Below are positions 11,783 to 56,295 of a DNA stretch of 64,000 nucleotides, piece by piece. Position 1 is the stretch's first letter. Each line of letters starts with the position of its first letter. A model generated the notes under the pieces. The model did not search any database, was not told where the DNA came from, and saw only the letters and a list, made by a program, of their open reading frames with translations. Both the position numbers and the translations under genes were made by a program. The stretch spans positions 186,001 through 250,000 of the IMG/VR virus record IMGVR_UViG_3300024503_000015, one strand, 5' to 3'.

Positions 11783-14700
11783 TTAGAATCTACCAACAAC
11801 AATCTCAACTAGGCCTTCGCCTAAATCGTCTTTGTTCTCTAAACTCTTACCAATAATAGTTCCTACAGATGGAGTATTATTAACTATTGCGTAACCTTTC
11901 TTAGCCGCAGTAACTAGAATATCACCTTTCTTAACCTTACCAAGTACTTTACATGGCAAGCGTCCTGTTAGGCCTACTGCTAGTGGATGTTTTCCTGCTA
12001 AATCAGAGTTCATCAAATGCGCTGGTTTTTCAGAAATAACACCAGCAACTCTAGTATCGTTATGTTTGTCAGTGACTGTAATTTCTTCATCACCACCAAA
12101 TACTACAACAGTACCAGTTTCATATTCTGCATCTGACAAGTATTTTTCAGCCAAGTCAGCGTAACGAGCACTTGTAGCAGTACCATTGAATAATGTTGCG
12201 TATAGTGTGTCGGTAAATGGATTACAATAAATGCCGCCTGTGCCATATACACTATTACCGCTACCCCATAACATTTGATATGTGCTGTTACTATCGTTGT
12301 TATAGTTAATTGTAACTGTACTTGCATTACCTGCAATGTTCATTGACTGTCCGCTAATGAACGAAGCAACTTTTGCGGCTGTAGCAGAGCGATAGTAGTT
12401 ATCGCCAAACTTAGCCATTATGTATGTAATGGTGCCACCACTTACATCGTCGCTACTGTTAAAGTAACTGCTGTTAATATAACGTCCGTTGAAGTCACCG
12501 TTAACGTCACGTGCAACTAATGTGCTTCCTGTGGCCGCACTTGTTGCGTTAGTTTGGATTGTACGTGTTGTACTACCATCGTAACTTGAACCAGCAGTGA
12601 AACTTAGGTATGTGCTTAGACCCAGTGTACCAGCCAATGTACCAGTAACAGCACCGTAGATAGTTCCACCAACACGTAGGTCGCCACTGATACCTGCACC
12701 GCCTGTAACCTGTAATGTACCAGTACCGTTGGCAGCACCTGTTACTGCTTGGTTAGCAGTTAAGGTTACTGTATCGTTAGCAGACAACAATTTAAAATAA
12801 CCATTACCTCGAGTAGTTGCACCAATGTTTACGTTGTTTATTGATCCGACACTGGCCGGAGCAATAGTTACAGTACCGGTACCACTTGGACTTAGTGTTA
12901 CGTTAGCATTAGCAGGACTAAATGTTGTAGTGCTTGCTGATGTTATTGCGTTTGCACTTAAAGTACCAACTGTGGTAATAGTTGTGCCTGCTGAAGTAGT
13001 TCCAACTGCTGTTAAGAAGTCTACAGCACCGGGTGTAGTCATAGTCAGTGTAGTTCCGCTGACGCTTAAGGTCTTATAACTACTTGAAGTTAAGTCTAAC
13101 TGTGCTACAGCAACACGGCCGCTACCATCAGATTGTATCAATGAACTAGCCTGAGCACTTGTACTAATGTTTGTTGTACTGTAAGCGTTTGGACCAATAG
13201 CAGTTAAAATCATTGCACGACCATTGCTACCTACTGATCCTGGAGCAAATGACGCATTCTTAATACCATCGCCGTTGGTAACAATCTGTCCAGATGTTAC
13301 TTGACGAGGATATGTAGCACTGCCTGTATTATTACCTAAATAAGTGTCGTTGGCAATATACTGTAATTTAGTTTGTAATACACCTGTAGTTGTTGAACTG
13401 GATGTTTGCAACTCAATCCAACCGTTAGTTGCAGTAAATTCTGTACTCTTGAAACTTGCTAGACCCAAATCTGCCTGTGCAATACTTGTAGCATTTGCAC
13501 GAGTAGTTGCTTTATTCATGTCTAACTTACTTTGTGCAATAGCCGCACTAGAATTAACGTCTGCGTTAATAATTACATTAGACTTGATGTTTAAAGCAAG
13601 ATTTTTAGTTCCAGGAGTCAATGAAGTTTGAATATCGCCTGTGCTAACTGTTTCAGCGTTGATCCATTTAACTCCGTTATAAACTAATAAATCATTTAAA
13701 CTTCTTGCTGGACTTGTTGAAGTATCAACTCTGTCATCGCTTAGTTCTTGATTTCTAACATATAACTTGTTAGCCGCATCTGTATCAGCAGTAGGACTAC
13801 CTAAGTTAGCAATAACAAATCCGCCCATGTCCATTGGATCTGGACCAGTAAATGTTAACAAACCAGCACGATCCATGTAGCCTGGACCAATTAGTGCAGT
13901 TGGATCTAGAACGTTATTTGTACGATCCATTCCAAGACGTCTGTCAATGTAACCTTGTGTTGCCGCTTCAGTTGGTAGCGCATCGTTAGCACCGTCAGTA
14001 AATCTATCATCGTTTGAGAATTCACTAACTGTAACACCACGCTTAAATCCTAGACCGTCTAAGTTTGACAACGCAATAGATGCCGCAAACGTTACACGAC
14101 CAGTACCTTGGTCAACTGTAAAGAATCGACCTACACGGAAAATACCGTCTTGGTCTGTGGTTACATAGAAACAACGTCCTCTTGTACGTTCTGTAACTTC
14201 ACGTGCTTGGTTAGGTTCTTTTGGAGCACCGTAAATCTTGCTTGGGAAGTTAGTATCGTTATAGCCTCCAGTACCAATGTCTAAGAAGTCATGTCCTGTA
14301 ACACGGCAAGTACTAATACGTACAATAACTTCTGCTGGCTCTGTGCTAGATAAACCTGCACGTAATGTTGGAGGTTCAGAAATATCCAAGTTAAAGTCTG
14401 GATCAACTGGTGTATTAATACCGCTAGCAGATGTTCCTGCTAGACACTTATCAGCGACATCTTCTATTTCAACATAAGCGTAACCGGCTAATAACCCCAT
14501 GTCAGTGTAACTTAAAATTTTATGAATCTTGCCATCCCAGGCAGTAATCATATCTCCGGTATTAAGTCTGCTTTCAATGTCAGTTTCGTTTACACGGTCG
14601 ATGGCAATCTTAGTATCACCAGCAGTCGACCCCATAGTCTGTCCAACATTATCTGGATCAGCGTTAGATACATTTTCTGCATTGACTAGTAATTTTACAT

Positions 14701-17700
14701 AATCGTAAGTTGTATCGAAGCCTAGAATACTTTCGTCTACCGCAAGGTCTTCATTTAATGGACCTTTGTTACCGTATGCTAACACACGATAAACAATAGC
14801 ACCTGCATCGGGATCACCGACGAATGTCAATGCAGTACTTGGACGAACCGGGTTAGTGTCATCGACTTCGTAGAACTTAAAGTTTTGGTTACTGCGAATA
14901 ATAATTGGTTGGTCATGTGACAATGCTACGGCCAAGCCGTTTGTAGCAGTATCATTATTACCGCCAGTGTTGATGTTTAGACGTAGAACGTTGCCTAGGC
15001 CCCATAGGCTAGCCAAACCGCCTGCCCATGTTCCAGGATTGGTACTGTACTCTAGTGTAACACTAGATGTTGTACTAGCGGTAGCAGTATATACACCGTT
15101 AAACCCAGAAGTTGTTGATCCACTAACTGTGTAAGGTACACCAATTCTTGGTGTATATGGTTCAGCAGTGAACGAATATGTTACGTAATATTTTCCGCCT
15201 GTTGGCCCAGTCTTAAGTGGTGTTCCAGAAACAGACTGTGCCAAGGTACTTGAAACATCAGTTACACCTGCAACTTCGTAACGAGCAATACCGTTACCAA
15301 TAATAGTTTTAACAGTGATAAAGAAGCCCGAACCTGTTCCGCCTACGTTTGTATTACTGCAACTTAAAATATCACCTTCGCTGTATCTAATACCTGCGGC
15401 AACTAAACCTACAGTAGTTACTACACCTCCTGACACAACAATGTTAGCAGTGATACCACTACCAGTTCCGCCTGTTAACGGAACATTAATATATGTGCCG
15501 TTGGTATAACCACTACCACCGATTAAACTAGTTGCGTCTAGTTCTGTAACAACGCCAGCGCCGTGGTTAATTTCAACTTCAGATACGTTGTATGGTGAGT
15601 AATCATGTTGGTAGAAAAATACCTGTAAATCACCAACATCGTTGTCTGTGCTATAAATTCCTTGTTTGTAAACACGAGCAACCTGCATCATGTTGTCTGA
15701 CAAGTTACACTTATCTGGAACTTCTAATGGATCACTACCTTCAGAAATAATACCATACTCGCCGTGTGCGTTAGAACCGTTCAATGAACGAATCTGTCCA
15801 CCGTTGTTGGCATAATAAGCAGTCCAGCAATAGTAACTGAACACAGAAACTGTTTCAATCAAACCAATGTTTGTAGCAACCAGTCCATAACCTAAGTCGT
15901 TAATCTGTGTAAAGTCATTTGAACACATACTGGTGTTACCAGCACTTAGTAGCATAAAGTCTTTTACATACTCTATGGTAGTAGTGCCAGTGCCAAATGC
16001 ACCCGGGTCACTTGGATAACGTAGTGTCATCGAAGTTAGTGTAGATGCTACACACTCTACAGCATCATTGTTATAGTTAGAGTTGCTGTTGCCAAACACT
16101 CTATAACGTGTTTTAGTTCTAGGAGCAGTAGTTCCAACGGGCGTAACAATGCTGAATACTACATCGTAAGATCCATCCCCGACGCCCGAGTCTGCCTTGC
16201 TAGTGAAGGTAGAAATAGTATATTCTAAGTCGTTAGTTACAGGAGTAGTTGTAGAAAGAACTAATCTGTATGTTGGGTAAACGATAGGTTTGGCACCAGT
16301 TAATACTGTTGAAACATCTACTTCCGGGTCTGTAATAACTTCGTTTAATAAATCAAACAACTGTCCTGCTCGTGTAACAAATGCAGAGCCGTCGTAGTCA
16401 GAACTGAATACCTGTGATACTCTATTCTCTACAGCAACATCGTTAATAACTTGATAATTTAATGTTGGTGGAACTTGATTCAATACAGCCTGTGCAACTT
16501 CCTTGGCATAGGCAAATGAATCTAATGTTTGTGATAATTGATTTTCTAATACAACACGGCTACTAGCAGTACCTACATAGTAACGCTGTGCGGCACGAAT
16601 TGTTAAGTATGTTCCGCCATATAACAAGTCTGCTGAAACTGCGGCAACAATAAAGCCAACGTCTCGTGAACAAATTTCTTCATTGTAAACTAATGTGTTT
16701 GTATAATTAGCATCGATATAATTTGTTACAGCAGTTTGTAAAGTTGACTTAGCACTTTGTAGTGCAGAATTTGCACCAGTTAAGCCAGCACTTACCCAAG
16801 CAGTACTTGGAGTAATTGTTGAAGGAACAGAACCGAGCCCAAGGTCGATAATTGTTAAAATTTCTCCAATACGCTGTCCAGCAGTAGCACTGGCAGAACT
16901 GTTACCTGGAGTACCGCGAACCTGCGCAACACCACCTTGTAATGCAGTAATAGGTAAGTCTAATGCAATGTCTTCAACTAGACTTTGTAGATAACCATAT
17001 GCGGCCAATGTTGCTGGTTTCTCAGGAGCCGCAACTTGTAGAGTTGTGTAAGAATAATAAGCCTTACCAGCAATCAATGTTTGAATGTTACCACCGTAGG
17101 TTAGGTCGTGATATAGTGCATCTAAAATGTATTCTGTATCACGTAAGCATACAGCAGGGTCATAACTTAATCCAACATAGTTGTTAGAAATATATTGAAT
17201 TACTTCTGCTTTAATAAATTCTCTGTTAGATTCAATCAGTGTTCTAGCACGATTATAATTTACATCGTAGCCTGTTGGATCAGGAGTTACGATTGCAGGT
17301 TCTTGAGTTAGTCCGTTAGTAATAACATCTAAGAACATATTCATGTTGGTAGTTACACTAGTAACTGCGGTAGCACTTGCACTAACAACAGATAATATTT
17401 CATCTCTTAAGAAAGTAAATGCGTCAATAGTTGCGGCTTTTTGTACGCCAACAGCCACAGCGGCTGAAGCTCTGTAATAAGATCTTGCCGCTGTAATTGT
17501 CTGGAAGTTGCCGCCAAACATTAAGTCGTAACCAATAGCATCAATTACATAACCCACGTCACGTTGACATGTAGCAGAATCATAGGTAAATCCTACATAT
17601 TTGTTGTTAATGTAGTTAATAACTTCTGCTTTGATAAAATCTTTATTATCGACTAACAATGCACGAGCACCACGAGCACTTGGCGGATTTTCTAAAATGC

Positions 17701-20700
17701 CAATGAACTCGTCAAACAAATCTTGAATAGTTGCTTCTGCTAAGCCGCCATCGGTAATATCGGTATCGATATACTGTAGAACAGATTGTTGATATCGTAC
17801 TGTTGGATCTTCGTTATTAATAACATTTAATATCAATGTTTCAATGTAGTTAATAGCCGCAAGTGTGTTGGCCAACTGCTGGTCAATAACAATCTTAGAA
17901 CTAGCACTAGCATTGAAGTATGCTAGAGCTGCCTGAACTGTTTTTAAATTACCGCTATAATAAATGTCGTGTGCAATAGCATCGCAGATGTATCCAGTGT
18001 CACGAGCACAAGTATCTTGGTTGTAACTATATCTTTGTTGTAGATAAACTAATGTGTCAGACTTGATACTTTCTTTGTTGTTTAACAATAATGTTCTGCT
18101 GTCTGTTAACGAACCAGACACACTATAGAAAGTTGGATATTCAATAGTAGGAGCCGCTTCACGTCCGCTTAAAATAATAGTATTAATGTAGCCCATTAAC
18201 ACACCTACTCTAGCAGATTCAGTTGCGCTACCTGGATTAACTAAATCAAATACCTGTGTTACAGCACTTTGTTTAGGGAACGGAACAGGAGTATTAGTAA
18301 CAACTAACTGTGCAACACCACTGGCATAGGCCAATGCTTCTGTGGTTTGCAATGTTTGTCCAGGAATTTGCAAACTTCCGTTACCATCGTAATATTGATA
18401 TCCGGCTTCTACAGTTGCCGAGTTACCTTCATATAGTAAGTCGTAAACAATAGAATTTAAAATGTATGCCGCATCTCGACGACACTTGTCTTCGTCGTAG
18501 ACAAAGTCTGGATATTCTTCAGCAATCCAGGCAATAATTTCTTCTTTAATAAATTCAATGTTATCTAAAATAAGATTTTTTGCATTTACTCTTGAAGTAG
18601 GAGCACCTGACGGATCTGACCATGTAATTGTATCTGATGAAATAATACCGTTAGCAATGATATCTGTTATCTCATCAAAACTTGCTTCTGCTCTTAGACG
18701 TGCAACAGAGTTACCGGCTAATACATCAGAAATTAATGTTCTTGTATAGATTAACGCATCTAAGTATTCATCTTTTTGGTCTGGAAGAATACTGTATTGT
18801 GTGCCGCGATAGTATGATTGTCCAGCACGTACAGCATTAAAGTTTGTACCTAGTGCTAGATCGTAACCTAGTGCATCAACAATCAATCCAACGTCACGAG
18901 CACATTTGGTTTCGTTGAATGTAAATGGTGGACTTAGTTCTGTATTAATATAACCAATAACTTCTGCTTTGATAAAGTCGATGTTTCGACGAATTAATTT
19001 TCTAGCATTTCCATAGCCGTTGCCGTCATCAGTGTATGCTTCAACTTTAAAAGTTCTTCCGTCAATAACAAATGAGCAAGGAGTTGTTGGAGCACGTTCA
19101 CTGCCTGTTACTAGGAATTCTGTGTCGCTGATTTTTTCTTGAATCTTAAGAGGAACGTTACCAGCAAAGCCGTCAACATACTGTCCACCAGCAAAACGTT
19201 GTTTGTTTAGTGATCCTGCAAAAGAACCGGACTGTTGAATATATGCAGACTTGGTTAAAATTTGACCTTCTGGGTCAAGTACCATCATAAAGCCGCCGTG
19301 GCCTTGACAGGTAATCTGACGAATAATAACAGCATCGTTACATAAGAATACGTCAAGGTCTCTGTTGTTCTTTGGTTCACTTAAAATATCAGACGGGTCT
19401 GTTAGATAGTGATAACCGTATTCTGTGCTGGTTAAAGTTAATCCGTCAAATGTTTTATCTCTACGGAACCAAACGTCAACCCATGGACTGCGACTTGGGC
19501 GGTCCGCTGGACGAACAATACATCTACGCAATTCGTCACCAACGATAGCAACGTTTGGCGGGACACGAATTGGATAGTCTTCAAAATAGATACCAGATTC
19601 AACAACAATACTAATTTGGATATTTTTAACTGCTTGGTCAAACTCTAGGTTTTCGCCAGGCACAAAATCACCAATAACATCCTGCAAGTCAAAATAGTCT
19701 TCGCCGATACTTGAACTACCATCGGAGCCATAGTATTGATAAATGAAACCCTGTGCGCCGCTGGTACGTCCAACAACAATCTTACCGGAGACAATATCTG
19801 GTTTTGGTAATTGACCTTGGTCAACACGAGAACCACCGTTGTTAGTAAAGTAAACACGAGTAGTACCAGATGCACCAGATTCAATTCTTGTAACTTCAGA
19901 GAACGCTTCACCGCCACCGTAGGCAATTAACTGACGATAAGGACCAGTTTCCCATGGTGCATCATTTACTAATTGTTCTGCTTTTTGACAGGCTTTGTTA
20001 ATACTTGCATAAGCATAAGAACGATCGCGTCCTTCTTTTCCACGCGGTGTACGTGCCTGTGTGTCGTCACCGCCTGTGGTAACGTACAAGTTAAATCTGC
20101 TTGAATAACTTGAATTATCTACATAATATTTTGTAGCGGCTTGTAAGTCATCTTCTCCGTTAGGCGTACCAGCACCTGCAAGTCCGCCTGGATGATCTGC
20201 TAAGTTTAGCACACCAGTCATATCGCCGCCAGTTTTTAATACAACTTCTGCGGCACGTGGTGCTTGGTTACCTGTGGCGTTTGCTGGCACATTTAAGTGA
20301 CCAGTCATTGTGTCGCCTGTAATGTTTACATATTTGGAGTCGGCATAACCTTTGTTAATAGCAAAGGAATCTATGCTATAAAGAGTTTCGTGCTGTGTGT
20401 TGAAACTATTAACAGCAGTTTGGAAATCTGTTTGATTAATAGGACTGCGTAAGCCGCCGATTAATTGATTACGTGCATCCAGCGCATATTGTAATTTTGG
20501 TAATGGGTCGTCCTGTAATTTAGAACTTAATGTATCAATTTTAACGGAACCGTAACTGGTAATAGTACCAGTTGCCGCACTAGTTGATAAGTTTGTTCCT
20601 GCGTTTGTATATACTAGAACATTGTCTACTGTGCCAGTTAACAATAGGGCAGAAGTAGTGTTAAATGAAGTATTGTCTGTGGACGCGATTGTAACTCGTT

Positions 20701-21061
20701 GTCCAGGATCTAAATTGTGGTTTGCTGAAAGTGTAATAGTGGCAACGTTGCTACTTCTTGATACACTAACAATATCAAAGGTTTCTTGCTCGGAATAATC
20801 AAACTGGATAGTACCGTTAGGACTGAAAAAGTCTTTGAATACTAAACTAGTACCAATAGAATTAACTACTGGAATCTTATTACCTTGTCCTACTAATGTA
20901 TCAGGAGTATCGCTAAGGTCAGTGAACTTTAAAAATCCGCCTTGACCGAAAACAGCATATAACTCTTGGAAGTTTTCATTCGTTTTTCTAAACGCTTCAC
21001 GGATACTATCACCAGTTCCGTCATTACCTGATACGCCGATGTCGACTATTTTACGTGCCAT
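11783..21061 (-). CDS. Giant (~3100 aa) virion tail/baseplate protein
   Basis: gp9/10-like N-terminus (IGVSGNDGTGDSIREAFRKTNENF); six internal CxRD repeats; beta-rich regions; C-terminal YADLAEKY...GTVVVFGG domain common in tail fibres. Confidence 0.85.
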   Translation of the reverse strand: MARKIVDIGVSGNDGTGDSIREAFRKTNENFQELYAVFGQGGFLKFTDLSDTPDTLVGQGNKIPVVNSIGTSLVFKDFFSPNGTIQFDYSEQETFDIVSVSRSSNVATITLSANHNLDPGQRVTIASTDNTSFNTTSALLLTGTVDNVLVYTNAGTNLSTSAATGTITSYGSVKIDTLSSKLQDDPLPKLQYALDARNQLIGGLRSPINQTDFQTAVNSFNTQHETLYSIDSFAINKGYADSKYVNITGDTMTGHLNVPANATGNQAPRAAEVVLKTGGDMTGVLNLADHPGGLAGAGTPNGEDDLQAATKYYVDNSSYSSRFNLYVTTGGDDTQARTPRGKEGRDRSYAYASINKACQKAEQLVNDAPWETGPYRQLIAYGGGEAFSEVTRIESGASGTTRVYFTNNGGSRVDQGQLPKPDIVSGKIVVGRTSGAQGFIYQYYGSDGSSSIGEDYFDLQDVIGDFVPGENLEFDQAVKNIQISIVVESGIYFEDYPIRVPPNVAIVGDELRRCIVRPADRPSRSPWVDVWFRRDKTFDGLTLTSTEYGYHYLTDPSDILSEPKNNRDLDVFLCNDAVIIRQITCQGHGGFMMVLDPEGQILTKSAYIQQSGSFAGSLNKQRFAGGQYVDGFAGNVPLKIQEKISDTEFLVTGSERAPTTPCSFVIDGRTFKVEAYTDDGNGYGNARKLIRRNIDFIKAEVIGYINTELSPPFTFNETKCARDVGLIVDALGYDLALGTNFNAVRAGQSYYRGTQYSILPDQKDEYLDALIYTRTLISDVLAGNSVARLRAEASFDEITDIIANGIISSDTITWSDPSGAPTSRVNAKNLILDNIEFIKEEIIAWIAEEYPDFVYDEDKCRRDAAYILNSIVYDLLYEGNSATVEAGYQYYDGNGSLQIPGQTLQTTEALAYASGVAQLVVTNTPVPFPKQSAVTQVFDLVNPGSATESARVGVLMGYINTIILSGREAAPTIEYPTFYSVSGSLTDSRTLLLNNKESIKSDTLVYLQQRYSYNQDTCARDTGYICDAIAHDIYYSGNLKTVQAALAYFNASASSKIVIDQQLANTLAAINYIETLILNVINNEDPTVRYQQSVLQYIDTDITDGGLAEATIQDLFDEFIGILENPPSARGARALLVDNKDFIKAEVINYINNKYVGFTYDSATCQRDVGYVIDAIGYDLMFGGNFQTITAARSYYRASAAVAVGVQKAATIDAFTFLRDEILSVVSASATAVTSVTTNMNMFLDVITNGLTQEPAIVTPDPTGYDVNYNRARTLIESNREFIKAEVIQYISNNYVGLSYDPAVCLRDTEYILDALYHDLTYGGNIQTLIAGKAYYSYTTLQVAAPEKPATLAAYGYLQSLVEDIALDLPITALQGGVAQVRGTPGNSSASATAGQRIGEILTIIDLGLGSVPSTITPSTAWVSAGLTGANSALQSAKSTLQTAVTNYIDANYTNTLVYNEEICSRDVGFIVAAVSADLLYGGTYLTIRAAQRYYVGTASSRVVLENQLSQTLDSFAYAKEVAQAVLNQVPPTLNYQVINDVAVENRVSQVFSSDYDGSAFVTRAGQLFDLLNEVITDPEVDVSTVLTGAKPIVYPTYRLVLSTTTPVTNDLEYTISTFTSKADSGVGDGSYDVVFSIVTPVGTTAPRTKTRYRVFGNSNSNYNNDAVECVASTLTSMTLRYPSDPGAFGTGTTTIEYVKDFMLLSAGNTSMCSNDFTQINDLGYGLVATNIGLIETVSVFSYYCWTAYYANNGGQIRSLNGSNAHGEYGIISEGSDPLEVPDKCNLSDNMMQVARVYKQGIYSTDNDVGDLQVFFYQHDYSPYNVSEVEINHGAGVVTELDATSLIGGSGYTNGTYINVPLTGGTGSGITANIVVSGGVVTTVGLVAAGIRYSEGDILSCSNTNVGGTGSGFFITVKTIIGNGIARYEVAGVTDVSSTLAQSVSGTPLKTGPTGGKYYVTYSFTAEPYTPRIGVPYTVSGSTTSGFNGVYTATASTTSSVTLEYSTNPGTWAGGLASLWGLGNVLRLNINTGGNNDTATNGLAVALSHDQPIIIRSNQNFKFYEVDDTNPVRPSTALTFVGDPDAGAIVYRVLAYGNKGPLNEDLAVDESILGFDTTYDYVKLLVNAENVSNADPDNVGQTMGSTAGDTKIAIDRVNETDIESRLNTGDMITAWDGKIHKILSYTDMGLLAGYAYVEIEDVADKCLAGTSASGINTPVDPDFNLDISEPPTLRAGLSSTEPAEVIVRISTCRVTGHDFLDIGTGGYNDTNFPSKIYGAPKEPNQAREVTERTRGRCFYVTTDQDGIFRVGRFFTVDQGTGRVTFAASIALSNLDGLGFKRGVTVSEFSNDDRFTDGANDALPTEAATQGYIDRRLGMDRTNNVLDPTALIGPGYMDRAGLLTFTGPDPMDMGGFVIANLGSPTADTDAANKLYVRNQELSDDRVDTSTSPARSLNDLLVYNGVKWINAETVSTGDIQTSLTPGTKNLALNIKSNVIINADVNSSAAIAQSKLDMNKATTRANATSIAQADLGLASFKSTEFTATNGWIELQTSSSTTTGVLQTKLQYIANDTYLGNNTGSATYPRQVTSGQIVTNGDGIKNASFAPGSVGSNGRAMILTAIGPNAYSTTNISTSAQASSLIQSDGSGRVAVAQLDLTSSSYKTLSVSGTTLTMTTPGAVDFLTAVGTTSAGTTITTVGTLSANAITSASTTTFSPANANVTLSPSGTGTVTIAPASVGSINNVNIGATTRGNGYFKLLSANDTVTLTANQAVTGAANGTGTLQVTGGAGISGDLRVGGTIYGAVTGTLAGTLGLSTYLSFTAGSSYDGSTTRTIQTNATSAATGSTLVARDVNGDFNGRYINSSYFNSSDDVSGGTITYIMAKFGDNYYRSATAAKVASFISGQSMNIAGNASTVTINYNNDSNSTYQMLWGSGNSVYGTGGIYCNPFTDTLYATLFNGTATSARYADLAEKYLSDAEYETGTVVVFGGDEEITVTDKHNDTRVAGVISEKPAHLMNSDLAGKHPLAVGLTGRLPCKVLGKVKKGDILVTAAKKGYAIVNNTPSVGTIIGKSLENKDDLGEGLVEIVVGRF

Positions 21062-21131
21062 TGAATACTCCAAAAAAGACTTTGTATCCAATATTTAGCA
21101 GATAATTTTATAACCTTAATGTAAATAACTG

Positions 21132-22712: not shown

Positions 22713-23408
22713 TTACTGCCAGTTGTCAACAATGATTTGGTCCTGGACATCTTCGGGATTTGGTGTTCCGTGGAACGCAATTACGCTACAATCCGGGTTC
22801 ATAGACGGGCTACGCACCGTCTTAAACACGTTTTTACCCTGAACCCTAATCAACTCTTCCCGCTGTCTTATTTCCCACTTGTAGCTCTGTATCCAAGTTT
22901 CAGGGAAAAATTTTATAATACTTTTGTGTGACTGCCAAATCCAATCTTGATCACCTGGGAACTTTTTGGTTAACGCTGGATTGTTTTCCAAATCGTCCCA
23001 AATATTGCTGAAATGGTTACTGGGCCAACGCAGTACAGCACTACCTAATTTTGGTGGCACACGTCTAAACACTCTGCCTACATCTTCCAAACCAACAAAA
23101 TTTCCAGGCAGGTACGAAACCAATTTGTCTATATTACCTACAATAACCATATCCAAATCAAAGAACAAATTTACATCACCGTCTGGAAAATGTCCTTGTT
23201 TAAAGATATATGGTTTCCACCACCAACCAGAAAACAGTCCTTTGGGCAAGGGTTTAATTTTAATTGCAGGATTTAAGTTTGTAGGATCTTCAGTAAAGCA
23301 ATAAAAATCAAAAGGCACAGTTAAGTGCCTTGAGACCATATTGTAAAGTTTGTTTACATATTCCGGACCGTACTTTGTACCGTGTTTTAAACTAATGACG
23401 TTTAGCAT
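22713..23408 (-). CDS. Glycosyltransferase-like protein
   Basis: KHGTKYGPEYVNKL, FYCFTED, WWWKP, FFDLD (DxD-like), GDQDWI and FHGTPNP; GT-A-like pattern common in aquatic T4-like phages. Confidence 0.65.
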   Translation of the reverse strand: MLNVISLKHGTKYGPEYVNKLYNMVSRHLTVPFDFYCFTEDPTNLNPAIKIKPLPKGLFSGWWWKPYIFKQGHFPDGDVNLFFDLDMVIVGNIDKLVSYLPGNFVGLEDVGRVFRRVPPKLGSAVLRWPSNHFSNIWDDLENNPALTKKFPGDQDWIWQSHKSIIKFFPETWIQSYKWEIRQREELIRVQGKNVFKTVRSPSMNPDCSVIAFHGTPNPEDVQDQIIVDNWQ

Positions 23409-23569
23409 TACCAGTGCCTTATTACACCCGCTACAATGAATATGTTAGTTATTATATAAGTCAATACAATAACAGTTCGAATCAATGCAATCCTGTCCGC
23501 TTCTTGTTTGGTAACACCGGCTTTCTCTCCTAGTGCCTTGGCCCATAGTCTCCAAAACTTACGTACCAT
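23408..23569 (-). CDS. Small membrane protein (53 aa)
   Basis: Hand translation MVRKFWRLWAKALGEKAGVTKQEADRIALIRTVIVLTYIITNIFIVAGVIRHW; fills the gap between queD and the GT gene; below the ORF-track cutoff. Confidence 0.65.
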   Translation of the reverse strand: MVRKFWRLWAKALGEKAGVTKQEADRIALIRTVIVLTYIITNIFIVAGVIRHW

Positions 23570-24116
23570 CTTTATAAAAAACACTACGACTCTTAGGAGT
23601 TTCCCACCATTCGATGCTGTGAACTTTGACGCCTAATTTTTTCATTTTGACATCAACTAATTCTGCCATCCAACTACTTAGGTGTTCCGATGTTGGAACA
23701 AAGTCTACTACCATAAATCCTTCGTAGTATTCTTGTTCAGGACCAGACATATTAGCATAATAGATTGGATGAATATGCCAACCTGCAACGTATTCGGTTT
23801 CTGGAACATACACTGGAATTAGCTCGACTTTTTCTCCCAGCATCTTAGTAAACAGCGGATCGTTTTTATCAATAATAAATTGATGATCAATATAAGTGTT
23901 GATCCATTTCTTTAGCCATTCTAAATGTCTAAAGTCAGTGACCATTCCAGTTTTATCTAATCCGTCGCCTGTTAAATGAACCTGCATTTTACCTTCGTGT
24001 CCATGTAAATGTCTGCAAGCACATTTCAAGTCTGCCGCATATTCGCCGTTTAGTGTTTGTGTATGAACACGATGTCCATAACAAAATTCAAATGTTTTAT
24101 CAATGATCCAAGTCAT
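23559..24116 (-). CDS. queD: 6-carboxytetrahydropterin synthase (QueD/PTPS)
   Basis: FEFCYGHR, CRHLHGH, DFRHL, DH, PTSE and ETPKS motifs. Confidence 0.92.
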   Translation of the reverse strand: MTWIIDKTFEFCYGHRVHTQTLNGEYAADLKCACRHLHGHEGKMQVHLTGDGLDKTGMVTDFRHLEWLKKWINTYIDHQFIIDKNDPLFTKMLGEKVELIPVYVPETEYVAGWHIHPIYYANMSGPEQEYYEGFMVVDFVPTSEHLSSWMAELVDVKMKKLGVKVHSIEWWETPKSRSVFYKDGT

Positions 24117-24143
24117 CTCTTGCCCTTTTTAAGTTAAGTTTGA

Positions 24144-24187
24144 TGACACGCAGAGTATTTAAAGAGGGGTGAGCGTCTAGTCCTCTA
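24144..24187 (-). promoter_or_regulatory. Riboswitch-like H-type pseudoknot in the queD 5' UTR
   Basis: AGAGG/CCTCT stem with loop ACTAGACGCTCACC; loop ACGC pairs with downstream GCGT; begins at the predicted transcription start. Confidence 0.45.
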
Positions 24188-24194
24188 TTGATAC

Positions 24195-24223
24195 AGTATA
24201 TAGGTATTACATTATACTGTCAA
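24195..24223 (-). promoter_or_regulatory. sigma70-type promoter of queD
   Basis: TTGACA-17 nt-TATACT on the minus strand. Confidence 0.7.
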
Positions 24224-24782
24224 TAGTTTTGAATTTAACATTTGCCAAAAGCCAACTACTGGGCATCTGCCATTCTGTATTGTTAAAAACTACAAAGTAC
24301 TTATCGGGGAAACATTCAAACACGCGAGCAATCTGGTATATCCAATACCTTGGATCCACTGCGGGTTTAGTAGCATCTGCATAGTTAGCAGTATCTTTGT
24401 AAATGTTATTGACAAACTGTGTTGGGCTGTGTAGATCAAAACCAAATAAGTTTACATGGTCGTCTAGCATAGCGGCTAACAAAACAGCATACGGACCACT
24501 GCCCCATTGAAAAGGCTCGTCAGGTCTAGTAGTGCCCTGGTAAGGCAAGTCTGGTAATATTTTTACAGGATTGTTTTTGTAGAAGTGTGCCCAATCTTTT
24601 CTAGTATAGATTGTGCCAGCAAAGTGGCTATCCAGTGCTTCTTGTACCATACGTCTGTCTACACAGACTAAATGGTCGACTGAGTAGTCTCTATGTATGG
24701 CGTTACAGCCAACTTTAGTTTCTGTAAGTGAATTTAAATCTAAATGTTTTCTGGATTCGCCGTTGCCAAATACAGATATCAT
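24207..24782 (-). CDS. Hypothetical protein (possible sugar/pterin transferase fold)
   Basis: Start MISVFGNGESRK; GCNAIHRD, HLVCVD and WGSGPYA; recurrent in aquatic myophages. Confidence 0.55.
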   Translation of the reverse strand: MISVFGNGESRKHLDLNSLTETKVGCNAIHRDYSVDHLVCVDRRMVQEALDSHFAGTIYTRKDWAHFYKNNPVKILPDLPYQGTTRPDEPFQWGSGPYAVLLAAMLDDHVNLFGFDLHSPTQFVNNIYKDTANYADATKPAVDPRYWIYQIARVFECFPDKYFVVFNNTEWQMPSSWLLANVKFKTIDSIM

Positions 24783-26392
24783 CTTCCGCCAATATAACCG
24801 AACGGCTCCCAAGTACCAGGAGTACCGCTCATTACGCAGATCCATCCAACGTAACTAGTTCTTACTGGACTGCTATTCCAAATGATATCGCCTTTGTTCC
24901 AGGCTTTTTCTGTAGGAGCACCTACGCCGTGTGCAAAGCGTTTACCATTGATAACCATCATTCCGTCTACGCTGAATGCCGCATCTTCTTGTGGGTTGGT
25001 AATGTTTACACTTAGTTGTCCATAGATGTTTACATTTCTAGTTGTATTATTTTTGTCACCGATACGGATACTGCCAGCGTTATCTACTTCAAAGTCTTCG
25101 CCAATGCCAAACTTATCTGCTGTAATACCACTGCTGGATAATCTTAATGTGCCCGAGCCGTCTTTGATTGTTACAGAATTGTTAATTGTAACTACGCTGT
25201 CTTGTACAGTAATGCTGTCTGACAAGTTTACTGTTCCAGCAACATCTAATGATGTCAGTGTGCCTAAACGAGTAAGACTAGAGTTAACAACGCTAACTCC
25301 TAGGTCAGTTCTGTTTAATACACTCTTACCGTCGATCCAGAATTCTTTGTTAATTGCTAATTCAAGACTTTCTGAAGAATAGATTCTGTCAGGGTTTGGA
25401 AGCATAATAAACTGACGTGTACCACCTTCGCCCTTCCATTGCATACCCTTGCCAAAAATACTGTTATCCTTACTGGCTATAAATTCTATTGGACTAGTTT
25501 TTTCGATTCTGATGTCAGATACAATGCTGTCTACTTCTAATCTGCCGTGAACTTTGACTATTGCGCCTTTGCTCTTAGCATTGCCAAACTCTGTAGTGTT
25601 TCCTGATACTGTAATACGTCTTGTGTTATCGGTAACAATACTGAAACTGTTACTGCCCCAAGTACCTACAAAACCCACTGAGTCTTGATCCGCACCTAAA
25701 ATTACTTCTACATTATTGTCAACGGCACTGATAACTGCGTTTGGTTCTTCTGTATTGACACCTAGTCTTCCTAGGGCATTAACAAAAACTGTGTCACCTA
25801 GGTTTGTTTCGCCTGTAACACGTAGTTCTTCTAAAGGACCCACTGTGCGTAGGTTACTGTCACGTACTGAATTACCTAATCTTGTGCGCTCTAAAACATC
25901 TGTGCCTTCAATTTGATACTTAGAACCTTTGTATAAATCAATAGATTCTGTGCTGAAAATTCTTTTTGGGTTTGCTTTAAAAACAAACTGATAACTTACA
26001 TCTGGGCTGTCCCATTGCAAGCCTTTACCATCTAAATCGCTGAGTTGTCTGCTGGCAAAAGAAATGGATTTTGTAAATGATTCTAGGCTTTGTTCTGAAA
26101 TAACATTCTTAACTAACAGCGTATCTGCTTCTAATTTGCCGTTAACTTTTAAGTTAGCAAATTCGCTAGTACCTGCGGCAACAATTTTTCCAGCGCCAAG
26201 AACGCCTTCTACGTGAATGTTTCCGCTAATTCTGTCAGCACTTAATACGCCAACCTGTACACCTTTATCTGTAACAATCATCTGCTCACGTGTAGCAGTA
26301 TCAGAAATGCCCTTAGATAGTGTGCCACCGTTAGCGGCTGATTTTAGTGCGTCACCTAAATCTTGAAGAATTTTGTCGATGTTTGAGCTCAT
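24779..26392 (-). CDS. Virion structural / tail-fibre-like protein
   Basis: Start refined to MSSNIDK (ATAAATA upstream); internal duplication (GKGLQW...FKANPKRIFS / GKGMQW...LPNPDRIYS); C-terminal GDIIWNSSP...GWIC...GTPGTW motif. Confidence 0.75.
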   Translation of the reverse strand: MSSNIDKILQDLGDALKSAANGGTLSKGISDTATREQMIVTDKGVQVGVLSADRISGNIHVEGVLGAGKIVAAGTSEFANLKVNGKLEADTLLVKNVISEQSLESFTKSISFASRQLSDLDGKGLQWDSPDVSYQFVFKANPKRIFSTESIDLYKGSKYQIEGTDVLERTRLGNSVRDSNLRTVGPLEELRVTGETNLGDTVFVNALGRLGVNTEEPNAVISAVDNNVEVILGADQDSVGFVGTWGSNSFSIVTDNTRRITVSGNTTEFGNAKSKGAIVKVHGRLEVDSIVSDIRIEKTSPIEFIASKDNSIFGKGMQWKGEGGTRQFIMLPNPDRIYSSESLELAINKEFWIDGKSVLNRTDLGVSVVNSSLTRLGTLTSLDVAGTVNLSDSITVQDSVVTINNSVTIKDGSGTLRLSSSGITADKFGIGEDFEVDNAGSIRIGDKNNTTRNVNIYGQLSVNITNPQEDAAFSVDGMMVINGKRFAHGVGAPTEKAWNKGDIIWNSSPVRTSYVGWICVMSGTPGTWEPFGYIGGR

Positions 26393-53722: not shown

Positions 53723-53797
53723 TGGTCCCGCTACTACGAATCGAACGTAGACTTACTCTTTAGGAGAGAGTCGTTCTATCCATTGAACTATAGCGAG
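53723..53797 (-). tRNA. tRNA-Arg(CCT)
   Basis: Cloverleaf by hand; ACTCT-CT CCT AA-AGAGT; encoded CCA. Confidence 0.88.
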
Positions 53798-53807
53798 GGA
53801 GGGAATT

Positions 53808-53915
53808 TGGTGTGACCGGGAGGGTTCGAACCTCCAAGGACGGCATATCGCCTAGTCCCGACCCACGGAGTGTTTCACAACAGTCCTGGAGCTCTGCCTA
53901 TTCGCTCACGGTCAC
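53808..53915 (-). ncRNA. tRNA-like RNA with expanded anticodon arm (108 nt)
   Basis: Perfect 7-bp acceptor stem, ACCA, D-arm and T-arm; ~41-nt branched insert instead of an anticodon loop; no variable loop. Confidence 0.7.
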
Positions 53916-53946
53916 ATACTAAGTATATAACCTTTTCAGCAGTTTG

Positions 53947-54387
53947 TCAACGGGTTATGAGGTATTCGTAGTTCACTGTGTTGTCGTTTTCTTGCAACAC
54001 ACAGGCACCATTTCTGATATGGAACTTGTAGGCCATTTCAGTTTTTGGGCTAAGTGTTACAAAACGATTAACAGTTGGGAAAAGTTCTTTTATTTGATCC
54101 ACTACACCAAAAAGTAGCTCTGCGGCCGCACCCGGCGCATAACTCCAAATTGTATAGAAGATTGCTGTAGTTGGTTCTGTGGGTGTTTTAGCCAAATCTT
54201 CAACAGTTGTTGGCACAAAATCGTGCAGACTAACACAGACCATTGCACGTGGTTTTTCGCCTTCTACAGTGGTGGCGACAAATCTGCTACCGCTAACACG
54301 AAATTCTTTGGGAATTTCTGGACGTACTGGATCATCCTTGATATAGTCAAGTAATGGATTAGTAGTTTCTCTGATTAATGTTAGCAT
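53947..54387 (-). CDS. GNAT-fold protein resembling the malonyl-CoA decarboxylase C-terminal domain
   Basis: AIFYTIWSY...FVTLSP compared with the MCD AVFYSI...TLSP motifs. Confidence 0.5.
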   Translation of the reverse strand: MLTLIRETTNPLLDYIKDDPVRPEIPKEFRVSGSRFVATTVEGEKPRAMVCVSLHDFVPTTVEDLAKTPTEPTTAIFYTIWSYAPGAAAELLFGVVDQIKELFPTVNRFVTLSPKTEMAYKFHIRNGACVLQENDNTVNYEYLITR

Positions 54388-54425
54388 ATAACTATTTAGC
54401 ATTTAGTGGGCAGATTATGGTGTTA

Positions 54426-54500
54426 TGGTGGTAACGGTGAGATTCGAACTCACACCTTGCTCCGTATGAAGGAGGTGCACGACCATTATGCTACGTTACC
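54426..54500 (-). tRNA. tRNA-Met/Ile2(CAT)
   Basis: Cloverleaf; loop TT CAT AC; CCA. Confidence 0.85.
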
Positions 54501-54502
54501 AG

Positions 54503-54739
54503 ATTATTAGTAAGATGTCCCGAGAGTTTTGGTTTGGGTAAGGCCATCCGACGGTGCGATTCGTCCCTCTCTTTGTCTAGCCCAACATGAAGTTCTTGTA
54601 GTCTCAATCCGCTCACCTTGCACCGGCGCTTGATACATATACTCTACAGCATTAAAGTTTATAACTTCAATTAACAAAAACTTCCGATCTTTGTTAACTC
54701 CTTGCGGATGCTTTTAGAACCTTAACTACTTACTAATAA
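54503..54739 (-). ncRNA. Candidate ~235-nt structured RNA
   Basis: 11-bp terminal stem; GCAA tetraloop; G-U-containing hairpins favour the minus strand. Confidence 0.5.
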
Positions 54740-54741
54740 AA

Positions 54742-55010
54742 GGGGTGGAGAGAGAAAGGCAAGTAATAGACTGGACAATGTACAAGCGGGCTCTATAAAG
54801 ATACCCTTAACAAGTCACAAGGCGCAAAGCACAGGGACCTGTATATTTCCAGTTAGCAACTCACAAAGTCGATTAATATATAGAACTGGTTCACACAAGC
54901 ACGAAACGTTTTCAAGACGTTTTGCCAGTAGTTGATGTTCGGTCTCTATAAGAGATCAAACCTTAGGCATGTAGCCTAAGTCTGTCTATCCTAATCTCCT
55001 TCTCTACTCC
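54742..55010. ncRNA. Candidate ~270-nt structured RNA
   Basis: Terminal 11-bp stem with three G-U pairs on the plus strand; several internal hairpins. Confidence 0.4.
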
Positions 55011-55039
55011 AGGCTCGGGCTTTCGCCTTTGCCAAAACT

Positions 55040-55113
55040 TGGTTGCGGGACCTGGAATCGAACCAGGATCTAGAGCTTATGAGACTCTTGAGTTACCGTT
55101 TCTCTATCCCGCG
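55040..55113 (-). tRNA. tRNA-fMet(CAT)
   Basis: C1:A72 mismatch; CT CAT AA; CCA. Confidence 0.85.
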
Positions 55114-55120
55114 ATAACTT

Positions 55121-55249
55121 TATAGGTGCTCTCTGTTCGACTCGAACGAAACCTGCTGAGCTCCTTATCTTCCTGGCACTTTCGGTGGGTAGTCGACTTA
55201 GCACCTAACTCGTGTTATCCAGTGTAGTTCAGCTCAGAGAGCATTTATA
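55121..55249 (-). ncRNA. Candidate tRNA-like structured RNA (~130 nt)
   Basis: TGCTCTCTG/CAGAGAGCA stem; T-loop TTCGAGT just before the 3' strand; no CCA. Confidence 0.45.
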
Positions 55250-55250
55250 A

Positions 55251-55449
55251 AGTGTCTAGCCACTCCCACCACAGGAGCCCTAAACCGAGCTGTTACTCTG
55301 TCCACTAGCCTTTCCATTTAGACGGTGCTGAGGTCCGCCTTTGTGATTTCTCAAGTCGCTTTAAACAAGCCTTGCGGTAGATCCAATGCACCGAGCCATT
55401 AAGGTGTAGCAATTACCTAACTCTATCACGCTGAGTTAACGCGGGGTCT
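55251..55449 (-). ncRNA. Candidate ~200-nt multi-hairpin RNA
   Basis: Non-coding; hairpins TAACTC/GAGTTA, AGGT/ACCT, CC-GCAA-GG, GGCGG/CCGTC and CTCC/GGAG. Confidence 0.4.
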
Positions 55450-55450
55450 G

Positions 55451-56023: not shown

Positions 56024-56089
56024 TTGTTTTTCCTTTAATGTTTCTATTATACAATCTTTTAAATCTAAATCAATGCCTTTTGGCAAAAC

Positions 56090-56289: not shown

Positions 56290-56295
56290 ATTACT

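What the first reader, a model, noticed from the sequence alone, without database searches (positions are those of the whole stretch)
24117..24223. Riboswitch-like pseudoknot at the very start of the phage queD transcript
Seen: a sigma70 promoter puts the start ~1-2 nt before AGAGG-ACTAGACGCTCACC-CCTCT-TTAAATACTCT-GCGT, an H-type pseudoknot ~25 nt upstream of the SD. Established: preQ1-I riboswitches are small H-type pseudoknots with an AGAGG...CUAG...CACC...CUCU pattern and regulate que genes; phage QueD feeds 7-deazaguanine (preQ0) DNA or tRNA modification. The 3' tail here departs from the A-rich preQ1-I consensus. Inference: a phage-borne variant riboswitch, possibly sensing preQ0, a pterin or GTP.
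Basis: partly seen in the sequence, partly recalled or inferred. Interest (0 to 1): 0.62.

Follow-up and report, generated by a model that had tools for sequence, protein, structure and literature searches.

The report
Phage queD pseudoknot riboswitch candidate
The short RNA in front of this phage's queD gene is one copy of a conserved pseudoknot found before queD in at least about 190 distinct leader sequences from uncultured phages; it looks like an undescribed riboswitch class that turns translation on, but its ligand is unknown.

Summary
On its own it is not remarkable (fold z-score -0.5). Comparison changes that.

It is an H-type pseudoknot with strong covariation: on 99 distinct copies 93% of cells pair and 8 of 10 pairs show compensatory changes.

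- **P2** is not ACGC:GCGU. It is GACGC:GUGUC, then a U.C mismatch, then CA:UG.
- **Unpaired nucleotides** stay fixed: L1 N-C-U, L2 Y-C, L3 nUAnAnAYUC.

Rfam's preQ1-I model does not find it in six viral records, and no other Rfam family matches it.

The 3' strand of P2 overlaps a helix that sequesters the start codon or Shine-Dalgarno sequence in 89 of 95 leaders, across at least six different platform designs. Pseudoknot formation should therefore free the ribosome site, which makes this an ON switch, unlike known preQ1 switches.

The ligand is unknown. A guanine-faced pterin or 7-deazapurine is the inferred best guess.

I rate it a new variant of a known kind, with high interest.

The parts
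24195..24223 (-). Sigma-70-type promoter: -35 TTGACA 24223-24218, 17-nt spacer, -10 TATACT 24200-24195. The predicted transcription start is near 24188.
   Evidence: Consensus scan, 11 of 12 matches. Of 189 distinct copies, 54 have a sigma-70-like -10 box 3-12 nt before P1 and 59 have a T4-late-like TATAAATA box 2-13 nt before P1; the two groups overlap, and 100 have neither by these strict criteria. The start site itself was not measured.
24145..24186 (-). Whole aptamer: an H-type pseudoknot of 42 nt.
   Evidence: Covariance model R1 scores 70.4 bits here (E 1e-21), and this is the only copy in the 270-kb record.
24182..24186 (-). P1 5' strand, AGAGG.
   Evidence: Pairs with 24167-24163. Fully paired variants seen elsewhere: AGUGG/CCACU, AGCGG/CCGCU, UGCGG/CCGCA, ACCGG/CCGGU, AGACG/CGUCU, AUCGG/CCGAU.
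24178..24181 (-). L1, ACUA. The consensus is N-C-U followed by 1-7 variable nucleotides.
   Evidence: In 92 distinct copies not selected by the RNA pattern, the C is present in 92 and the U in 91.
24170..24177 (-). P2 5' strand: GACGC (outer 5 bp), U24172 (opposite C24150, a mismatch), then C24171 and A24170 (inner 2 bp).
   Evidence: All 5 outer pairs covary, for example GGCAU:AUGCC, GACUU:AAGUC, GACAG:CUGUC. Inner pairs: A:U changes to G:C in L417, L422 and L484, and C:G changes to U:A in L361. None is broken in 102 distinct sequences.
24168..24169 (-). L2, CC. The consensus is Y(U)C, and the final C next to P1 is invariant.
   Evidence: The final C is present in 92 of 92 unbiased copies. 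That it acts as a ligand-pairing base, as in preQ1-I (PMC10622847), is inference only.
24163..24167 (-). P1 3' strand, CCUCU.
24153..24162 (-). L3, UUAAAUACUC. The consensus is nUAnAnAYUC.
   Evidence: A at positions 3, 5 and 7, U at 9 and C at 10 are present in 92 of 92 unbiased copies. That it contacts the P1 minor groove is inference.
24145..24152 (-). P2 3' strand: U24152 and G24151 (inner pairs), C24150 (mismatch), GUGUC 24149-24145 (outer pairs).
24142..24147 (-). Anti-start strand GUCAUC. It shares G24147, U24146 and C24145 with the P2 3' strand.
   Evidence: It is the perfect complement of GAUGAC 24117-24112 and pairs with it in the MFE fold.
24123..24127 (-). Shine-Dalgarno-like AAGGG, lying in the upper part of the sequestering hairpin.
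   Evidence: Read from the sequence and the fold.
24112..24117 (-). GAUGAC: the G at -1, the start codon AUG (24116-24114) and the next 2 nt. This is the target of the anti-start strand.
   Evidence: The G at -1 is present in all 20 GUCAUC-type leaders among the 22 window-type motif-bearing sequences, but not in relatives that lack the motif.
23559..24116 (-). queD: a PTPS/QueD-like gene of 185 aa, carrying a C-x3-HGH motif.
   Evidence: PF01242 at 95.7 bits; TIGR03367 QueD at E 2.7e-16, below its cut-off; phrog_2389 at E 2e-34. The closest solved structure is 3JYG, an uncharacterized protein (E 2e-47).

Best explanation
This is one copy of an undescribed, apparently phage-restricted class of small cis-regulatory RNA, a riboswitch candidate that controls translation of queD (6-carboxytetrahydropterin synthase, the second step from GTP to preQ0).

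**Structure.** The aptamer is a 42-50-nt H-type pseudoknot near the 5' end of the mRNA. It has a 5-bp P1. P2 has 5 outer pairs, a U.C mismatch and 2 inner pairs. About a dozen unpaired nucleotides are invariant.

**Mechanism.** The last 2-5 nt of the P2 3' strand are also the first nucleotides of a local hairpin that pairs with the start codon (here GUCAUC with GAUGAC) or, in other phages, with the Shine-Dalgarno sequence. By nearest-neighbour energies that hairpin wins (-10.4 kcal/mol against about -4 for P2), so the default state is OFF. A ligand that locks the pseudoknot takes those nucleotides away from the hairpin and exposes the ribosome site, turning translation ON.

**What is shown and what is inferred.**
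- Shown: the structure, its conservation, the link to queD, and the strand sharing.
- Inferred: that the trigger is a small molecule, and that it stabilises the pseudoknot.
- Best guess for the ligand: a heterocycle with a guanine-like face from the same pathway. Candidates are the QueD substrate 7,8-dihydroneopterin triphosphate or a related pterin, or GTP (feed-forward), or else preQ0, preQ1 or CDG.
For: 1. **Covariation.**
   - 22 distinct copies: 96.8% paired, 7 of 10 pairs compensatory, 0 of 500 shuffles as good, slid controls 31-67%.
   - 99 distinct copies: 93.4% paired, 8 of 10 pairs compensatory, 188 double-change cells against 53 in shuffles.
   - The inner P2 pairs covary and are never broken in 102 sequences.
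2. **Conserved unpaired nucleotides** in copies found through the protein or through the expression platform, not through the RNA core.
3. **Gene association.**
   - 110 of 116 pattern hits lie directly upstream of a QueD-like ORF.
   - QueD is gene 1 or 2 in 152 of 163 loci.
   - 66 of 78 loci fetched by a divergent QueD protein carry the motif.
   - There is one copy per genome in the window's record and in five other large records.
4. **Pathway context.** The phage also encodes FolE, a QueE-like and a QueC-like protein. QueE follows queD in 20 loci. folE lies directly upstream of the motif in two large records.
5. **A conserved aptamer with varied platforms.** At least six platform designs were seen. 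In 89 of 95 distinct leaders, 2 or more nt of the P2 3' strand pair into the -14..+6 ribosome window. Duplex energy is -8.8 against -3.9 kcal/mol for shuffled strands.
6. **Energies** for the window's copy: P1 -4.1, sequestering hairpin -10.4, P2 about -3.7.
7. **Not a known family.** No Rfam family matches, and eight literature searches found no description of it.
Against: - No ligand, no binding data and no expression data.
- An ON switch on a biosynthetic gene is unusual and needs a feed-forward or positive-feedback rationale.
- The energy comparison ignores tertiary contacts, so the pseudoknot could be stable without any ligand.
- About half of the copies lack an obvious promoter box just upstream by strict criteria.
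- The 120 pattern-derived copies cannot vary at the positions the pattern fixed. I therefore used only the protein-anchored and platform-anchored sets for conservation claims.
- None of the six cultured phages I checked has the motif, so no ready experimental system is known.
Confidence: 0.6

Rival explanations
1. It is a true, highly diverged member of the preQ1-I riboswitch family. It still binds preQ1 or preQ0 through the L2 cytidine, an L1 uridine and an L3 adenine, and it has acquired a longer P2, a 5-nt insertion (UCUGC) in the tail and an inverted platform.
For: - Same topology and similar dimensions: P1 of 5 bp, and the loop plus L2 of 13-19 nt.
- An invariant C ends L2 next to P1, a U is conserved in L1 and adenines are invariant in L3. 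These match the three recognition elements described for preQ1-I types I-III in PMC10622847.
- The controlled gene is in the preQ1 pathway.
- From my memory of the B. subtilis sequence, the 5' half looks alike (AGAGG..CUAG..CACC.CUCU).
Against: - RF00522 gives no hit at the site in six viral records. The best score elsewhere is 13.8 bits against a cut-off of 39.
- Part of what would be L2 and L3 in preQ1-I is base-paired here (CA:UG).
- The CUAG of the window's copy is not conserved in relatives.
- The platform logic is ON rather than OFF.
Confidence: 0.2
2. The pseudoknot is an operator for a protein: a phage translational regulator, or QueD itself. The known parallel (from memory) is the 5' pseudoknot of the T4 gene 32 leader, which nucleates gp32 binding.
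For: - It is a 5'-terminal H-type pseudoknot in T4-like and jumbo phages.
- T4-late-like TATAAATA boxes precede many copies.
- Invariant single-stranded nucleotides could equally be protein contacts.
Against: - The element stays with queD while QueD diverges to 22-35% identity and the surrounding genes differ. No conserved partner gene was seen.
- A protein that stabilises the pseudoknot would activate translation, and positive autoregulation by an enzyme is unusual.
- The compact pocket-like pattern of conserved nucleotides at a helix junction is typical of metabolite aptamers.
Confidence: 0.1
3. It is a ligand-independent structure, for example a 5'-end cap-like fold that protects the mRNA from 5'-end-dependent decay, a folding timer, or a thermosensor or Mg sensor. 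The sequestering hairpin would then simply set a low translation rate.
For: - It lies at the predicted 5' end.
- P2 has 7 pairs and could be stable by itself.
- No ligand is known.
Against: - A stabiliser would not need about 12 invariant unpaired nucleotides.
- It would not be restricted to one gene family, with one copy per 270-380-kb genome.
- The sharing of the P2 strand with the ribosome-site hairpin was reinvented in at least six designs, which argues for a regulated choice between two folds.
Confidence: 0.08

Closest known systems
preQ1-I riboswitch (Rfam RF00522; types I-III)
   Same: - A small H-type pseudoknot with a 5-bp P1.
- A conserved U in L1, an invariant C at the 3' end of L2 adjacent to P1, and adenines in L3 (family features from PMC10622847).
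- It controls a gene of the GTP-to-preQ1 pathway.
- The 3' strand of P2 is the element that talks to the ribosome site.
   Different: - Rfam's model does not recognise it.
- P2 is 5 + 2 pairs around a U.C mismatch instead of 3-4 weak pairs.
- L2 is only 2-3 nt.
- L3 has alternating rather than consecutive adenines, plus an invariant UC.
- The Shine-Dalgarno sequence is not part of P2. Instead the P2 strand is shared with an anti-RBS hairpin, giving ON rather than OFF logic.
- It was found only in viral contigs and phage-like MAG contigs.
THF-II (folE motif) and THF-I riboswitches
   Same: cis-regulatory RNAs on the neighbouring step of the same pterin branch (folE). They recognise a pterin through its guanine-like face (PMC6800512 abstract; recognition detail from my own knowledge).
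   Different: - No Rfam match to either family.
- Those are hairpin or three-way-junction folds.
- To my knowledge they are OFF switches in bacteria.
T4 gene 32 leader pseudoknot (protein operator)
   Same: An H-type pseudoknot at the extreme 5' end of a phage mRNA that governs translation of the downstream gene (from my own knowledge).
   Different: - That element nucleates cooperative binding of gp32 and represses translation.
- Here the element is tied to a metabolic enzyme gene.
- Its strand sharing predicts activation.
Riboswitches already reported in phages (glutamine/glnA RNA, preQ1 in phage Seurat)
   Same: Phage-borne cis-regulatory aptamers (PMC9004378; PMC4342423).
   Different: Those are copies of bacterial classes present in Rfam. 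This motif has no Rfam model.

Membership tests
preQ1-I riboswitch (RF00522) | Scores at or above the family's covariance-model gathering threshold (39 bits). | tested here: not met
   There is no hit at the site even at E<=10 in the window's genome. The best hit elsewhere scores 13.8 bits. The same holds for five other motif-bearing records. cmscan at E<=10 on the region and on 20 further copies returns no preQ1 family.
preQ1-I riboswitch (RF00522) | H-type pseudoknot with a short P1 and a P2 formed by the hairpin loop and the 3' tail. | tested here: met
   Both P1 and P2 are supported by covariation. P2 is longer (5 + 2 pairs) than in preQ1-I.
preQ1-I riboswitch (RF00522) | A conserved cytidine in L2 as specificity base, a conserved U in L1 and a conserved A in L3 (PMC10622847). 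| tested here: inconclusive
   An invariant C ends L2, L1 has an invariant C-U, and L3 has three invariant adenines. Whether they occupy the equivalent three-dimensional positions cannot be told from sequence.
preQ1-I riboswitch (RF00522) | An A-rich, single-stranded L3 tail leading directly into the P2 3' strand. | tested here: not met
   L3 is nUAnAnAYUC, and the following UG is base-paired with the CA of the former 'L2'.
preQ1-I riboswitch (RF00522) | Ligand-bound pseudoknot sequesters the Shine-Dalgarno sequence or favours a terminator (OFF switch). | tested here: not met
   The Shine-Dalgarno sequence lies 18-25 nt downstream of P2. The P2 3' strand is shared with an anti-RBS hairpin in 89 of 95 leaders. 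No terminator-like site was found.
preQ1-I riboswitch (RF00522) | Binds preQ1 (and preQ0) with high affinity. | not testable with these tools
   Needs in-line probing, ITC or SPR.
Riboswitch (generic: metabolite-sensing cis-regulatory mRNA element) | A conserved structured aptamer supported by covariation, with conserved unpaired nucleotides. | tested here: met
Riboswitch (generic: metabolite-sensing cis-regulatory mRNA element) | Consistent location in the 5' UTR of genes of one pathway. | tested here: met
   It lies upstream of queD in 152 of 163 loci. QueE is co-transcribed in 20 loci.
Riboswitch (generic: metabolite-sensing cis-regulatory mRNA element) | An expression platform that shares nucleotides with the aptamer, so that two mutually exclusive folds exist. 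| tested here: met
   At least six platform designs, with strand sharing in 89 of 95 leaders.
Riboswitch (generic: metabolite-sensing cis-regulatory mRNA element) | Direct, protein-free binding of a small molecule that changes gene expression. | not testable with these tools
   No biochemical data. RNA-seq evidence was also unobtainable.

The most novel reading that the evidence does not exclude
This would be a riboswitch class known so far only from viruses: a translational ON switch. It would let phages open the branch from GTP cyclohydrolase product to 7-deazaguanine (QueD, often with QueE) only when a guanine-faced pathway metabolite has accumulated. The likeliest such metabolite is the FolE product 7,8-dihydroneopterin triphosphate, or a pterin derived from it. 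The effect would be to protect the folate supply the phage needs for DNA synthesis. It would add a new ligand or a new fold to the riboswitch catalogue. It would also point to a function of the phage preQ0 pathway that does not need a canonical DpdA, since no Pfam TGT domain was found in 30 motif-bearing records.
Probability: 0.3. Interest if true: 0.88.

Novelty: new variant of a known kind. Interest (0 to 1): 0.8.

Why it matters
- **A possible virus-only class.** The phage riboswitches I found described are borrowed bacterial classes. A widespread class found so far only in viral contigs would show that phages evolve or retain their own metabolite sensors.
- **An inverted output from a preQ1-I-sized RNA.** It is about as small as preQ1-I, the smallest known aptamer, yet appears wired for the opposite output. 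That makes it a compact natural ON switch of interest for RNA structural biology and synthetic biology.
- **A handle on the phage pathway.** It gives a way to ask what the FolE-QueD-QueE-QueC pathway does in large aquatic phages that lack a recognisable DpdA, and which intermediate the phage monitors.
- **A caveat on the metagenomic bins.** The four true hits among 120 bacterial-collection hits are all in MAG bins. The one I examined, binned as Rickettsiales, is a phage contig.

Tried and rejected
Only 56% of cells pair and there is no consistent covariation. Rejected in favour of GACGC:GUGUC plus CA:UG.
2. **Membership in preQ1-I or any Rfam family.** There were no hits at the gathering threshold over the whole window, at E<=10 on 601 nt around the site, or at E<=10 on 20 further copies. 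RF00522 searched alone in six viral records also found nothing.
3. **MAFFT alignment of the leaders.** It misplaced gaps in P1. I replaced it with model-guided alignments.
4. **Other copies in the same genome,** for example before folE, queE or queC. None found.
5. **Bacterial copies.** Almost all were chance matches with unpaired P1 and P2. Four true hits are in MAG bins, and one of them (L285) is a phage contig syntenic with the window. Absence from bacteria is therefore not shown.
6. **Cultured phages.** BLAST of two leaders against INPHARED gave only noise. Six cultured phages with QueD homologues (ACP17, R5C, Me-ZS1, BUDD, PA5oct, CPt10) have no motif, and four of them have no intergenic space before queD.
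7. **A second 'leader family'** that shared the class C hairpin pattern. It turned out to be an ordinary intrinsic terminator hairpin followed by UUUU. Rejected.
8. **RNA evidence.** I did not try another route, and read laying was not used.
9. **Literature.** Eight searches found no description of this motif. Subscription-only papers are not covered.
10. **A co-regulated partner gene.** The phrog_1962 glycosyltransferase follows queD in the window and in L285, but in only 27 of 142 loci overall. It is not a constant partner.

Full report
**1. What is in the window**

The finding lies on the minus strand. Reading 5' to 3':
- TTGACA (24223-24218), a 17-nt spacer, TATACT (24200-24195).
- Eight nucleotides, then AGAGG (24186-24182).
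- ACUAGACGCUCACC, then CCUCU (24167-24163).
- UUAAAUACUCUGCGUGUCAUC (to 24142).
- A 25-nt linker holding AAGGG (24127-24123), then AUG (24116-24114).

The promoter scan scores the two hexamers at 11 of 12. The ORF (23559-24116, 185 aa) is a PTPS/QueD-family protein: PF01242 at 95.7 bits, phrog_2389 at E 2e-34, with a C-x3-HGH motif.

The window is part of a 270-kb IMG/VR virus record. That record also encodes:
- FolE (133 bits);
- a QueE-like radical-SAM protein (phrog_2076, E 2e-54);
- a QueC-like PP-loop protein (PF06508 at 28 bits; phrog_1550).

No TGT/DpdA domain (PF01702) was found.

**2. Is it more than chance?**

Taken alone, no. The 86-nt leader folds no better than shuffles (z -0.50). 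No Rfam family matches it, at gathering thresholds or at E<=10. The preQ1-I model searched alone over the genome finds nothing at the site.

**3. Comparative evidence**

I fetched 80 viral loci through the QueD protein. In 36 of them the same element sits before queD, giving 22 distinct sequences.

P1 changes by compensation: AGAGG/CCUCU, AGUGG/CCACU, UGCGG/CCGCA, AGACG/CGUCU.

It is GACGC:GUGUC, with variants GACAG:CUGUC, GGCAU:GUGUC and GACAU:GUGUC. On the model-guided alignment:
- 96.8% of cells pair;
- 7 of 10 pairs have compensatory changes;
- no shuffle out of 500 reaches this;
- sliding the partners drops pairing to 31-67%.

I then scanned IMG/VR for the invariant letters. On 99 distinct copies:
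- 93.4% of cells pair;
- 8 of 10 pairs are compensatory;
- there are 188 double-change cells against 53 in shuffles.

P2 shows GGCAU:AUGCC, GACUU:AAGUC, GACAA:UUGUC, GGUG:CACC and others.

A pattern scan fixes the letters it asks for. I therefore took conservation only from copies found independently of the RNA core:
- the 22 above;
- 43 distinct copies from a second, divergent QueD protein query, where 66 of 78 loci carry the motif;
- copies found through one type of expression platform.

In 92 such sequences the following are fixed:
- L1: N-C-U (C 92/92, U 91/92);
- the last base of L2: C (92/92);
- L3: nUAnAnAYUC (A3, A5, A7, U9 and C10 all 92/92).

These sets also revealed two more base pairs. 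The 'CA' after the P2 5' strand pairs with the 'UG' before the P2 3' strand. A:U becomes G:C in L417, L422 and L484, and C:G becomes U:A in L361. Neither pair is ever broken in 102 sequences. P1 position 2 also covaries (G:C to C:G, ACCGG/CCGGU).

The refined structure in the window is:
- P1: 24186-24182 with 24167-24163;
- L1: 24181-24178;
- P2: 24177-24173 with 24149-24145, then U24172.C24150, then C24171-G24151 and A24170-U24152;
- L2: 24169-24168;
- L3: 24162-24153.

**4. Gene association**
- Of 116 pattern-found copies, 110 are directly followed by a QueD-like ORF that is only 22-35% identical to the window's.
- Clustering the first four downstream genes of 163 loci puts QueD first in 148 and second in 5.
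- The few first genes that are not QueD are a cupin, a DUF1698 methyltransferase, an unknown protein and a 306-aa PTPS-like protein.
- Genes that follow queD include a QueE-like radical-SAM enzyme (20 loci), two glycosyltransferase families, a methyltransferase, UvdE, a KdsA-like enzyme and a sugar epimerase.
- The model finds exactly one strong copy per genome in the window's record and in five other large records, three of them 93-100% complete.
- In two of those records folE lies directly upstream of the motif.
- None of 30 long motif-bearing records has a Pfam TGT domain, while 20 have FolE.

**5. How it probably works**

Downstream of the aptamer the leaders differ, but always in the same way. 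The 3' end of the P2 3' strand runs into a sequence complementary to the start codon or to the Shine-Dalgarno sequence:
- GUCAUC with GAUGAC or GAUGGC (the window's type);
- CCAUUG with CAAUGG;
- CCUAUG with CAUAGG(AG);
- GUCUUC with GGAGAC;
- UGUCU with AGACA.

When the region after UCUGC is folded, 2 or more nucleotides of the P2 3' strand pair into the -14..+6 window in 89 of 95 distinct leaders. Usually 3-4 nucleotides do. The duplex is 5 kcal/mol better than with shuffled strands.

In the window, G24147, U24146 and C24145 belong both to P2 and to the anti-start helix (24147-24142 with 24117-24112). Nearest-neighbour energies give -10.4 kcal/mol for the sequestering hairpin, about -3.7 for P2 closed as a helix, and -4.1 for P1.

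The plain reading is this. Translation is OFF by default. It turns ON when something stabilises the pseudoknot.

A conserved aptamer joined to several independently built platforms that all share the same strand is the usual signature of a riboswitch. That the stabiliser is a small molecule is inference. So is its identity.

The invariant C next to P1, together with a U in L1 and adenines in L3, recalls the preQ1-I pocket (PMC10622847) and suggests a ligand with a guanine-like face. For an ON switch on the enzyme that consumes the FolE product, a feed-forward signal makes the most physiological sense to me. That signal would be 7,8-dihydroneopterin triphosphate, a related pterin, or GTP. preQ0, preQ1 or CDG would imply positive feedback. 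The U.C mismatch inside P2 is an alternative place for a pocket.

**6. Comparison with known families**

The closest is preQ1-I. They share the topology, the size, the three kinds of conserved loop nucleotides and the pathway. They differ in these respects:
- no match to RF00522 in six records;
- a longer, partly different P2;
- a 2-3-nt L2;
- alternating adenines in L3;
- the Shine-Dalgarno sequence is not in P2;
- the logic is inverted.

I therefore do not file it as a preQ1-I member. It works like a small pseudoknot riboswitch, and whether it is a distant relative is open (I give that 0.2).

Other rivals:
- A protein operator like the T4 gene 32 pseudoknot (0.1).
- A ligand-independent 5' structure (0.08).

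Against both, the restriction to one gene family, the dozen invariant unpaired nucleotides and the repeated reinvention of strand sharing all weigh heavily.

**7. Novelty**

No Rfam 15 family matches the window's copy or 20 other copies. Eight full-text searches found no description.

The motif was not found in six cultured phages with QueD homologues, nor by BLAST in INPHARED. The one I examined (L285, binned as Rickettsiales) is a phage contig syntenic with the window. So it is a new class candidate, so far seen only in uncultured viruses. I rate it a new variant of a known kind.

**8. Limits**
- There is no RNA-level evidence.
- The transcription start is predicted only. About half of the copies have a recognisable -10 or T4-late box just upstream.
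- Energies ignore tertiary structure.
- The ligand and the direction of regulation need experiments.

Noticed in passing
window 57698-58161 (-), and 53726-61379 (-): A GOLLD RNA (RF02032, 207 bits, E 4e-57) with a tRNA embedded at 58026-58097. It sits inside an array of 30 tRNA genes, all on the minus strand.
   Followed up: no
window 11783-21091 (-): A single ORF of 3102 aa, ending about 560 nt before the UvdE-like gene. It was not annotated here.
   Followed up: no
window 22713-23408 (-); L285:814-1527 (-): A 231-aa protein (phrog_1962 'glycosyltransferase', no Pfam hit) lies downstream of queD, after a 58-aa ORF (23408-23584) whose end it abuts. The same order, phrog_30607, then motif-queD, then phrog_1962, recurs in a very distant marine contig. 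However, a homologue lies downstream in only 27 of 142 motif loci.
   Followed up: partly
30 motif-bearing viral records (G006-G035), and G000: None has a Pfam TGT/DpdA domain, including three 330-380-kb records estimated 93-100% complete. 20 of the 30 have FolE. Either DpdA is too divergent for PF01702, or the preQ0 pathway serves something other than DNA modification, for example queuosine in tRNA, given the large tRNA arrays.
   Followed up: partly
G030:C1:81985-83304 and G025:C1:106817-107988: In these two large records folE lies directly upstream of the motif-queD unit on the same strand, so the element occupies the folE-queD spacer. In the window's genome folE is 56 kb away, next to the QueE-like gene.
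   Followed up: partly
window 23559-24116 (-): The closest solved structure to this 185-aa QueD subfamily is PDB 3JYG, deposited as 'Uncharacterized protein' (E 2e-47, aligned over 181 residues). Classical PTPS structures match only at E about 1e-4.
   Followed up: no
window 24207-24223 (-): The upstream ORF (24207-24845, phrog_30607, function unknown) ends at 24207. The -35 box of the queD promoter therefore lies inside its last codons.
   Followed up: no
L285 (NZHE01000025.1); L243 and L291 (CAIJZG01): These contigs carry the motif but are binned as bacterial MAGs (Rickettsiales MED657, and Bacteroidetes YR_bin-4742). L285's genes are phage-like (an exonuclease, QueD and PHROG families of unknown function). 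The L285 contig looks like a phage contig mis-binned into a bacterial MAG; L243 and L291 were not checked.
   Followed up: partly
L415:140-300, L430, L435, L447, L452, L496: A conserved intrinsic terminator hairpin, CUCCUAUGC-loop-GCAUAGGAG-UUUU, lies between two genes of related phages. It resembles the class C Shine-Dalgarno-sequestering hairpin of the motif, but it is not linked to the motif.
   Followed up: yes
L018, L024, L027, L040 (about 30 nt upstream of P1): In one subgroup the -10 box lies about 25-30 nt further upstream. An extra segment (for example GGCAUUAUAUAGGC) precedes P1, and P1 has only 4 pairs. It was not analysed further.
   Followed up: no
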